A stretch of DNA of 63,916 bases, the filler included, from Octopus bimaculoides (Eukaryota): the NCBI RefSeq assembly GCF_001194135.2. It is 5 parts of 5 records of this genome, joined end to end, with 100 filler letters (N's around TTAATTAATTAA, not from the genome) between each part and the next. Parts side by side here need not be neighbours in the genome. Positions count along the whole stretch, not along the records: positions 15,652 to 38,257 come from NC_068981.1; 4 more parts are not named here. One strand, given 5' to 3'. This document shows, in pieces, positions 26,046-27,015 of the stretch. Each line of letters starts with the position of its first letter. Position 1 is the first letter of the stretch. The position numbers and the translations under genes are program-made. Below the pieces are notes generated by a model, which was given only the letters and a program-made list of their open reading frames with translations, was not told the origin of the DNA and made no database searches.

Positions 26046-26259
26046 TATATAATATTATATTACATTATATATAAATAGGTGTGTGTGTGTGTGTGTGTGT
26101 GTGGTGGTGGTGTATGAAAATAAAAGTTGAACATGACAGGGTTTGAACTCTGAAAATAACGAAGACATTATCTAAAATATAATTCTGCAACAGTAATTTG
26201 GTAAAGTTTTCACGCATCTTAATGTAATTATTTGAAAGCAATCTAGAAAAACATCTTAC

Positions 26260-26325
26260 TCTAAATTTTCTTTACATTCTTCTTCGAGTTTCATTGATGT
26301 CGTCTGTCGTCAAAGTTTTGTTTAG
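26260..26325 (-). other. Candidate first exon of leftward transcript (ATG 26294, MKLEEECKENL, donor GA|GTAAGA)
   Basis: Consensus donor; lies just downstream of the left promoter motif; resembles the rightward first exon. Confidence 0.5.
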
Positions 26326-26487
26326 CAGACGATAATTTATTGCAAAAAGCGCATGCGTGAAATGATGAGTGATATAGTAAACAAAAAACAAAAAAACCCA
26401 AAACTACTTTTCACTGTCCAACTACCATCGCCATCTCCTTTAAGTGATATTCCTACTGACACCACCACCACCTAAATAGTTAGATAG

Positions 26488-26562
<75 letters not shown>

Positions 26563-26702
26563 TAAAGTAAAATTAAAATGAAAATTATTTTGAATGGCAA
26601 ATAACTTGAATTGAGTGCGGTGGTGGTGACGGTGGTGGTTTTTGCATTTTAATTACTTTATTGCCCACACGCATGCGCATTTATAATAAATTATCGTCTG
26701 CT
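26324..26702. promoter_or_regulatory. Bidirectional promoter with inverted-repeat motifs (NRF1/EWG-like GCGCATGCG + ATAAATTATCGTCTGCT)
   Basis: 26324-26359 is the reverse complement of 26668-26702 apart from a 7-8 nt spacer; splice donors point outward on both sides; CpG retained locally. Confidence 0.6.
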
Positions 26703-26730
26703 CGATCGAAACTTGTTTTCCTTCAAAAAT

Positions 26731-27015
26731 ATGGACAGCGACAGACGTCAGAGAACAAGTAGAAGCACGAGAAGAAGAAGGTTTAGGGTAAGGTGCCTTT
26801 TATGTGTTTGTTTTAATGACATAATTGTATTCTCTGAAGACCTTCTGCTGTTCAACTCTCTTCAGAGTTTCTTGGCACCGGTCAACAGACGTCATCGTGG
26901 CACAAATGGAGAAATGAGAAAGCTTGGGACATGGTGGTTTTACGTTGTTTTTTTCTTTTCAATAACCGTATTTGTCAAAATTCTACAAATGTACCCAAGC
27001 AGAATGATATTATAG
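26731..27015 (+). CDS. Candidate two-exon small ORF (26731-26787 + 26866-27015), 68 aa, Arg-rich N-terminus and one hydrophobic segment
   Basis: AGG|GTAAGG donor, ctctcttcag acceptor, 78-nt frame-preserving intron; could equally be a uORF or non-coding. Confidence 0.35.
   Translation: MDSDRRQRTSRSTRRRRFRVRCLLCVCFNDIIVFSEDLLLFNSLQSFLAPVNRRHRGTNGEMRKLGTWWFYVVFFFSITVFVKILQMYPSRMIL

What the first reader, a model, noticed from the sequence alone, without database searches (positions are those of the whole stretch)
26230..26800. Mirror-image bidirectional promoter: inverted duplication of promoter plus first exon
Seen: read outward, both arms give CACGCATGCGC, 7-8 nt, ATAAATTATCGTCTGCT, then GACAGACG...GAAGAAGAA...TTTAG(A/G)GTAAG(A/G)TG, so motif, first exon and splice donor are all duplicated in inverted orientation. 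ACC-rich (26461-26471) and GGT-rich (26620-26639) tracts also mirror around a central (GATA)n(GA)n. The perfect 11-mer and 17-mer survive while neighbouring bases diverge. Known: NRF1-type sites are enriched in head-to-head promoters. Inference: an old palindromic duplication made two divergent transcription units from one ancestral promoter, and the 17-mer is a candidate uncharacterised core-promoter or TF motif under selection.
Basis: partly seen in the sequence, partly recalled or inferred. Interest (0 to 1): 0.72.

Follow-up and report, generated by a model that had tools for sequence, protein, structure and literature searches.

The report
Mirrored promoter-plus-first-exon duplication, one side active
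A small promoter, its first exon and its splice site were copied in mirror image long ago in this cephalopod-like genome; RNA shows the left copy is a rarely used start of a spliced, apparently non-coding transcript, while the right copy is conserved but shows no transcription, so a two-way promoter is not shown.

Summary
Read outward, both arms carry CACGCATGCGC, then 7-8 nt, then ATAAATTATCGTCTGCT. About 100 aligned columns at 58% identity follow, ending in TTTAGRGTAAGRTG. The whole-arm inverted score is 44.5, against at most 25.5 elsewhere in the piece.

It is not a high-copy transposon. Unique DNA contigs at single-copy depth span each arm. Both arms sit at the same locus in two related species, and the right arm plus the left motif module in a third.

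The left arm is a true first exon. One RNA contig starts at 26317, 7 nt past the 17-mer. It splices at the predicted donor (26260|GTAAGA) to an exon at 19308-19206. It is a minor alternative start: three other RNA runs join that exon to a different upstream exon outside the window. The transcript looks non-coding.

The right arm has an intact donor, retained CpGs and a motif module unchanged in four species. No RNA was found in seven runs laid on it or in the public run index. Its 19-codon ORF changes mostly by amino-acid replacements and has no protein match.

Constraint on the 11-mer core and the 18-mer is plausible but untested genome-wide. Interest is modest.

The parts
26349..26359 (-). 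Left copy of the 11-mer CACGCATGCGC, an NRF1-like site matching GCGCATGCGC at 9 of 10 positions
   Evidence: Exact match. In organism D, one of the contigs covering it carries G>A at 26349. No change is listed in B or C.
26341..26348 (-). Left spacer TTTTTGCA (8 nt), variable
   Evidence: It differs from the right spacer. 26348 varies in B, C and D. Organism A carries a 1-nt insertion variant behind 26345.
26324..26340 (-). Left copy of the 17-mer ATAAATTATCGTCTGCT (an 18-mer with 26341); AT-rich, TATA-like, immediately upstream of the RNA 5' end
   Evidence: Exact match. The RNA contig starts 7 nt downstream of it. Organism C has A>G at 26335, inside the motif.
26260..26317 (-). Left first exon, at least 58 nt and RNA-supported; donor GTAAGA follows at 26259-26254
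   Evidence: X40 RNA contig (568 nt, depth 6.1), record positions 1-58, matches 26317..26260 with no mismatch. It then continues into sequence found at 19279-19308.
19309..26259 (-). Intron 1 of the left transcript (6951 nt, GT..AG)
   Evidence: Junction 26260|19308 in the X40 contig. The acceptor reads ttcttttttgtag.
19206..19308 (-). Exon 2 of the left transcript (103 nt), shared with the main isoform
   Evidence: RNA contigs in X40, X41, X25 and X27 cover it, with depth up to 1600 in X25. In X41, X25 and X27 it is preceded by a different exon that is not in the window.
26363..26664 (.). Centre of the palindrome: weakly mirrored ACC (26460-26472) and GGT (26619-26639) tracts around the (GATA)n(GA)n microsatellite at 26482-26562
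   Evidence: The inner mirror similarity is marginal.
26668..26678 (+). Right copy of the 11-mer CACGCATGCGC
   Evidence: Exact match. In organisms C and D, 26669 A>G makes the full palindrome GCGCATGCGC.
26686..26702 (+). Right copy of the 17-mer (an 18-mer from 26685)
   Evidence: Exact match. No difference is listed anywhere in 26670-26711 in organisms B, C or D.
26703..26787 (+). Right exon-like segment: ATG at 26731, 19-codon ORF MDSDRRQRTSRSTRRRRFR, donor GTAAGG at 26788. No RNA support.
   Evidence: Sequence. No reads or contigs lie on it, and no indexed RNA run holds it. Between species it shows 4 replacement and 1 silent change, plus AGA and AAAAGA insertions. The ORF has no protein match.

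Best explanation
This is an old, single-copy inverted duplication of a roughly 135-nt promoter cassette. The cassette holds an NRF1-like site, an AT-rich TATA-like 18-mer, a short first exon and a strong 5' splice site. The two copies face outward across about 300 nt that is now filled with microsatellites.

The left copy works. It is a minor, alternative transcription start and first exon of a multi-exon, apparently non-coding minus-strand transcript. Its exon 1 (26317-26260) splices to 19308-19206 and then onward out of the window.

The right copy keeps its motif pair, its CpGs and its splice donor. In all available RNA data it is silent or below detection.

Shown: the duplication, its low copy number and age, and the left start and splice.

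Inferred: the two perfect blocks (the 11-mer core and the 18-mer) are held by purifying selection because they are the working promoter elements. NRF1-type activator binding, with the AT-rich block placing initiation about 20-25 nt downstream, is likewise inferred. The right copy would then be either a weak or tissue-restricted divergent start, or a retained binding module that serves the left start.
For: Inverted homology:
- Score 44.5, against at most 25.5 elsewhere in the piece and 11.5 in direct orientation.
- The downstream part is significant on its own.

Low copy and age:
- Organism A contigs spanning 26124-26411 and 26538-26859 have depth 8.5-9.5. Neighbouring unique contigs have 11.9-13.6.
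- Orthologous contigs in organisms B and C span both arms. In D they cover the right arm and the left module.

Left start, donor and exon 2.

Minor isoform: in X41, X25 and X27, exon 2 is joined to a different upstream exon that is absent from the window.

Non-coding look: stops fall soon after every ATG in the spliced left transcript, and the only long open frame has no homologue.

Constraint on the motifs:
- 18/18 and 11/11 identity, against 58% downstream.
- 26670-26711 is invariant in four species, while about 7% of flanking sites vary.
- The spacer between the motifs varies between species and within organism A.
- CpG observed/expected is 1.3-1.7 in both arms, against 0.35 for the piece.

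Direction of decay: left exon 1 keeps a decayed trace of the right ORF, FDDRRHQ* against MDSDRRQR.
Against: - The left start rests on a single assembled RNA contig of depth 6.1 in one run. The true 5' end may lie further upstream, so the 17-mer could be transcribed rather than be a promoter element.
- Three raw RNA runs show no reads on either arm, although only about 6% of each run was read.
- The species compared are only 2-5% diverged. The invariance of the right module is weak evidence, roughly P = 0.05 by my own estimate.
- Organism C has a substitution inside the left 17-mer.
- DNA contig depth over the right module is 2-8 times baseline. A few other loci may therefore share it.
- Short-tract gene conversion between the arms could mimic selection.
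Confidence: 0.6

Rival explanations
1. This is a true mirror-image bidirectional promoter. Both arms are active starts, and the right arm is the first, possibly coding, exon of a plus-strand gene. That gene's other exons and expression lie outside the window and outside the sampled tissues.
For: - The right arm keeps an ATG-initiated ORF that stays open up to a consensus donor AGG|GTAAGG.
- Indels between species in that ORF are multiples of 3.
- The right module is invariant in four species.
- CpGs are retained.
- The left exon looks like a decayed copy of the right ORF, which suggests the right arm is the original.
- NRF1 sites are enriched in human bidirectional promoters (PMC3082894, PMC10887517).
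Against: - No RNA lies on 26600-26820 in X40, X35, X36, X37 or X19-21.
- No indexed RNA run holds its words.
- Replacement changes outnumber silent ones 4 to 1.
- The 3-nt indels fall in an AGA repeat, where slippage by 3 is expected anyway.
- No protein in the database shares words with the ORF.
Confidence: 0.27
2. This is the relic of a low-copy foldback or TIR element. Its terminal inverted repeats happened to carry promoter-like sequence, and one end was later co-opted as an alternative first exon.
For: - The architecture is palindromic with a microsatellite centre, and it folds back with z = -7.4.
- Depth over the right module is 2-8 times baseline, which hints at a few related loci.
- A real high-copy foldback element lies only 700 bp away at 27492-28083. 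Such elements are therefore active in this genome.
Against: - Contigs spanning each whole arm are at single-copy depth.
- The structure is at the same locus in the related species examined, unlike the neighbouring element, which is absent in B and C.
- No further copy exists in 22 kb.
- The arm ends are fuzzy, with no recognisable termini or target-site duplication.
Confidence: 0.08
3. The two perfect blocks are kept identical by short-tract gene conversion between the arms, or are recent chance survivors, not by selection. The 17-mer has no function of its own.
For: - Inverted repeats about 330 nt apart are good conversion partners.
- Organism C tolerates a substitution in the left 17-mer.
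- No genome-wide enrichment was shown.
Against: - The two blocks are separated by a spacer that differs between the arms and varies in length within organism A. One conversion tract would have homogenised that spacer too.
- The blocks coincide with an NRF1-like consensus and with the position just upstream of the observed RNA 5' end.
Confidence: 0.15

Closest known systems
Head-to-head (bidirectional) RNA polymerase II promoters with NRF1/GABPA/NFY/YY1 sites, as described in human (PMC3082894, PMC10887517)
   Same: Two outward-facing start-like modules lie less than 400 bp apart. It is about 385 bp from the left RNA 5' end to the end of the right 17-mer. Each side has an NRF1-like GCGCATGCG core, and the base composition is mirrored (ACC on one side, GGT on the other).
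   Different: The two halves are homologous copies, including first exon and donor, not unrelated genes sharing a CpG island. The region is AT-rich (32-42% GC). Only one direction is shown to be transcribed, and it is a minor alternative start.
Alternative first exons and internal promoters of multi-exon genes, including lncRNA genes
   Same: The left exon splices to the same exon 2 that other runs reach from a different upstream exon.
   Different: This alternative first exon has a mirror-image twin 390 bp away on the other strand.
Promoter directionality set by the U1 site / polyA site axis in divergent transcription (recalled from memory: Almada et al. 2013; Ntini et al. 2013; not checked here)
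   Same: Both outward directions meet a strong 5' splice site (GTAAGA and GTAAGG) within roughly 60-90 nt of the start-like position. That is the feature thought to favour productive elongation.
   Different: Typical upstream-antisense directions lack a U1 site. Here the antisense side inherited one by duplication, yet it shows no stable RNA.
Foldback / MITE-type transposons with terminal inverted repeats (for example the element at 27492-28083 in this window)
   Same: Inverted arms around a simple-repeat centre, with strong fold-back potential.
   Different: Single or low copy, present at the same locus in the related species examined, with no defined termini. The neighbouring true element has contig depth of 1e5-1e7 and is absent in organisms B and C.

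Membership tests
Bidirectional (head-to-head) promoter | A transcription start on the minus strand at the left arm | tested here: met
   The X40 RNA contig begins at 26317 and is spliced at 26260 to 19308. This rests on one run at depth 6.1.
Bidirectional (head-to-head) promoter | A second transcription start on the plus strand within 1 kb | tested here: not met
   No read or contig lies on 26600-26820 in seven RNA runs. No indexed RNA run holds the right arm. Power is limited for weak or tissue-specific expression.
Bidirectional (head-to-head) promoter | Shared regulatory region carrying motifs typical of such promoters (NRF1 and others) | tested here: inconclusive
   An NRF1-like core is present in both arms: 9 of 10 positions, and 10 of 10 in organisms C and D on the right. 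Factor binding cannot be tested here.
   Contigs spanning each arm have depth 8.5-9.5 in X10, 5-10 in X13 and about 31 in X14, equal to the unique flanks. True repeats nearby reach 1e5-1e7. A 2-8 fold excess appears over the right module only.
   Both arms are present at the same locus in organisms B and C. The right arm and the left module are present in D.
   The similarity fades out at both outer ends near 26235 and 26800, so no sharp terminus could be defined to check.
NRF1 binding site | Palindromic consensus GCGCATGCGC | tested here: met
   ACGCATGCGC in both arms of organism A, and GCGCATGCGC in the right arm of C and D. This is a sequence match only. The consensus is recalled from memory, not taken from a tool.
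TATA-box core promoter | TATA-like element about 25-31 nt upstream of the start | tested here: inconclusive
   ATAAATTA begins 23 nt upstream of the 5' end of the RNA contig. Contig ends are not capped 5' ends, so the true spacing is unknown.
Protein-coding first exon (right arm) | ORF under protein-level constraint with homologues | tested here: not met
   4 replacement changes against 1 silent one between species. No database protein shares words with the ORF.

The most novel reading that the evidence does not exclude
The composite 'NRF1-like site, 6-8 nt, AATAAATTATCGTCTGCT' is a lineage-specific core-promoter cassette under purifying selection. Its inverted duplication, together with a first exon carrying a U1 site, created a symmetric promoter. 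Both sides of that promoter start spliced transcripts, the right one in tissues or stages not yet sampled. This would be a natural case of promoter bidirectionality arising by duplication rather than by intrinsic divergent initiation.
Probability: 0.2. Interest if true: 0.5.

Novelty: new variant of a known kind. Interest (0 to 1): 0.3.

Why it matters
If both sides were active, this would be a clear natural example of a bidirectional promoter built by mirror duplication of a promoter, first exon and splice-donor cassette. It would also offer a candidate cephalopod core-promoter motif for testing.

As the evidence stands, it is a tidy but modest case. A decayed local palindrome has one arm that serves as a minor alternative first exon of a probably non-coding transcript. 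It is useful for annotating this locus and as a lead for motif work. It does not open a new question.

Tried and rejected
- **Chance similarity:** rejected by shuffles, real-sequence tiles and the direct-orientation control.
- **High-copy TIR element:** rejected by contig depth and by orthologous contigs in related species.
- **A larger mirrored duplication that includes exon 2:** blastn of the left half against the right half finds only transposon fragments plus the 36-nt module.
- **A third copy at 28352-28388:** the eye sees AATAAATATCG, a 14-nt gap, then CGTCTGCG. The alignment score is at background.
- **Unspliced RNA over the right arm:** X40 showed depth 3.71 over 26614-27019 at 80% likeness. 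It did not reappear when 26566-27110 was laid alone, so I treat it as an artefact of repeat-anchored placement.
- **Locating the main upstream exon and exon 3:** the 30-nt loose ends are not in the window. They may lie beyond its edges or in the N gaps at 24021-24435, 25643-25823 or 36715-37544.
- **Gene identity by protein search:** the only long open frame of the transcript (48 aa) and the right-arm ORF (94 aa unspliced) both have no candidate.
- **Known RNA families and tRNAs:** only sub-threshold matches on simple repeats, and no tRNA.
- **Pfam on flanking ORFs:** only LINE reverse-transcriptase fragments.
- **Literature on cephalopod core-promoter motifs:** nothing relevant found.

Full report
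**1. The observation**

- CACGCATGCGC lies at 26668-26678 (+) and, reverse-complemented, at 26349-26359.
- ATAAATTATCGTCTGCT lies at 26686-26702 (+) and 26324-26340 (-). With the preceding A it is a perfect 18-mer.
- The spacers are ATTTATA (right) and TTTTTGCA (left).
- Downstream of the 17-mer, both arms run through GACAGACG, then GAAGAAGAA, then TTTAG(A/G)|GTAAG(A/G)TG.
- The ACC tract (26460-26472), the GGT tract (26619-26639) and the central (GATA)n(GA)n array (26482-26562) are as described.

The inverted alignment of the whole arms scores 44.5. The same arms in direct orientation score 11.5. The best match of either arm to any other 200-nt tile of the piece scores 25.5.

The part downstream of the 17-mer is significant on its own. 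It scores 26 against 10.7 +/- 2.0 in 1000 shuffles, and none of 1600 real tile comparisons reaches it. The maximum among those is 24, so this margin is modest.

Identity is very uneven: 11/11 and 18/18 perfect, against 59 of 102 columns (58%) downstream. The mirror of the inner ACC/GGT region is only marginal, reached by 10 of 1000 shuffles. The 571-nt region folds back on itself with z = -7.4. No larger mirrored duplication exists beyond the arms.

**2. Not a high-copy transposon, and old**

I laid DNA contigs of the same organism (X10) and of three related organisms (X13 = B, X14 = C, X15 = D) on the region.

- Unique contigs span each whole arm at single-copy depth. In X10 these are 26124-26411 at 9.5 and 26538-26859 at 8.5, against 11.9-13.6 for unique flanks.
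- True repeats in the same window reach 1e5-1e7.
- Orthologous contigs of B and C carry both arms. D carries the right arm and the left module. The duplication therefore predates the split of these species, which differ by about 2-5% here.
- The only hint of extra copies is a 2-8 fold depth excess over the right module, bins 26674-26717.

**3. Transcription, left arm**

One RNA run (X40) holds a 568-nt contig of depth 6.1.

- Its first 58 nt match 26317..26260 on the minus strand without mismatch. It then leaves the genome exactly at the predicted donor, with GTAAGA at 26259.
- The continuation is found at 19279-19308, behind a good acceptor, ttcttttttgtag.
- Laying RNA on that place shows a 103-nt exon 2 (19308-19206), followed by another GTAAGT donor and a third exon that is not in the window.
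- The contig's 5' end is 7 nt downstream of the 17-mer and 23 nt downstream of the start of ATAAAT.

Three other RNA runs that hold exon 2 (X41, X27, and X25 at depth 500-1600) join it to a different upstream exon of at least 216 nt. That exon is not in the window. The left-arm exon is therefore a minor alternative first exon.

The spliced transcript has stops shortly after each ATG. The only long open frame, 48 codons, has no homologue. It looks non-coding, but the protein database may simply lack this species.

**4. Transcription, right arm**

No read or contig lies on 26600-26820 in X40, X35, X36 or X37 (contigs), or in X19-21 (raw reads, about 6% of each run read). No indexed RNA run holds the right arm's words.

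A depth of 3.71 seen over the right arm at 80% likeness was not reproduced on a narrower stretch. I discount it.

X19-21 also show nothing on the left exon. Absence in those runs is therefore weak evidence.

**5. Conservation**

- *Right module.* 26670-26711 shows no listed difference in B, C or D, while about 15 of 210 surrounding sites vary. By my estimate, no change in 42 nt has a probability of roughly 0.05.
- *Right 11-mer.* 26669 A>G in C and D turns it into the full palindrome GCGCATGCGC.
- *Left module.* Organism C has a change inside the 17-mer (26335). The spacer position 26348 varies in all three species. Organism A itself is polymorphic for a 1-nt insertion in the spacer.
- *Left exon 1.* It carries indels: 6-nt and 1-nt deletions in C, and an AATAAA insertion at 26311 in B and C. 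This fits a non-coding exon.
- *Right ORF* (ATG at 26731, MDSDRRQRTSRSTRRRRFR, donor at 26788). It shows four replacement changes and one silent change. Its AGA and AAAAGA insertions fall in an AGA repeat, so being multiples of three says little. No database protein shares words with it.
- *Trace of the ORF on the left.* Left exon 1 retains a decayed trace of this ORF: TTG for ATG, then FDDRRHQ* against MDSDRRQR. This suggests the right copy is closer to the ancestral form.
- *CpG.* Both arms keep CpGs, with observed/expected of 1.3-1.7 against 0.35 for the piece. Both splice donors are unchanged in the species that cover them.

**6. What it is**

The best-supported reading is an old local inverted duplication of a compact cassette of promoter, first exon and splice donor.

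The left copy is a working but minor alternative start of a probably non-coding minus-strand transcript. The right copy is structurally intact and conserved, but has no detectable RNA.

The perfect blocks coincide with an NRF1-like core and with an AT-rich element just upstream of the observed RNA 5' end. The spacer between them is free to vary. This favours selection on two separate elements over a single gene-conversion tract.

How the 18-mer acts remains inferred. It could be a TATA-like positioning element. From memory and untested, it also contains GATA-like (CGATAA) and SMAD-like (CAGAC) strings. The contig end is not a capped 5' end, so the motif might even be transcribed.

**7. Comparison with known systems**

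The region resembles vertebrate head-to-head promoters, in which NRF1, GABPA, NFY and YY1 sites are enriched (PMC3082894, PMC10887517). It fails the defining test of a second start as far as the data go.

It differs from those promoters in that its halves are homologous copies, including a splice donor. It is not a member of the TIR or foldback transposon class, on both copy number and orthology.

It is best filed as an alternative first exon and promoter with a mirror-image paralogous twin. That is an unusual variant of ordinary things.

**8. Verdict**

- Interest is modest at 0.3. About 0.2 probability remains for the more novel reading, a symmetric duplicated promoter with a lineage-specific core motif.

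Noticed in passing
window 27492-28083: A foldback/MITE-like element of about 590 bp with TIRs of about 38 nt (GGATCTTTTTTAAAACGGGGGCCACATTTTTCATTAA and its complement). Its centre is a head-to-head telomere-like array, (TAACCC)6(TAGGGT)4, at 27731-27792. DNA contig depth is 1e5-1e7. The orthologous contigs of organisms B and C jump from 27489 to 28114, so this is a recent insertion in organism A.
   Followed up: partly
window 25840-26040: A very high-copy SINE-like repeat. DNA contig depth is 1e5-1e6 in all species, and it is abundant in RNA runs. It lies directly left of the left arm. ARAGORN finds no tRNA in it.
   Followed up: partly
window 19206-19308 (-): Exon 2 of the minus-strand transcript is strongly represented in run X25, at depth 500-1600. 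In most runs it is joined to an upstream exon of at least 216 nt that is not in the window. The palindrome may therefore lie inside an intron of the main isoform, or the exon may sit in an assembly gap.
   Followed up: partly
window 26740-26783: In organism D (X15), a contig of about 1000x depth matches the AGA-rich part of the right exon-like segment. Nothing comparable appears in organisms A, B or C. Unexplained; it may be a lineage-specific repeat or an abundant sequence in that library.
   Followed up: no
window 28252-28552: A second CpG-retaining patch, with observed/expected of 1.0-1.45 against 0.35 for the piece. At 28352-28388 it contains AATAAATATCG, then 14 nt, then CGTCTGCG, which looks like the 18-mer split by an insert. 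Alignment to the arms is at background and no RNA was seen there.
   Followed up: partly
window 35344-36218 (-): Fragments of a LINE reverse transcriptase (Pfam RVT_1, E = 6e-12 and 1e-6). Other long ORFs at 16880-17564, 29759-30298 and 37574-38189 have no Pfam match and are probably also transposon remnants.
   Followed up: partly
window 32596-33030 (+): An ORF with one intact and one degenerate C2H2-like zinc-finger pattern (CVMC...HMLVH; CHLC...NLRAH). It has no Pfam hit. It is possibly a decayed zinc-finger pseudogene or part of a transposon.
   Followed up: no
window 24021-24435, 25643-25823, 36715-37544: Assembly gaps (runs of N) inside the piece. They are flanked by AT/TG/CA microsatellites and could hide exons of the minus-strand transcript.
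   Followed up: no
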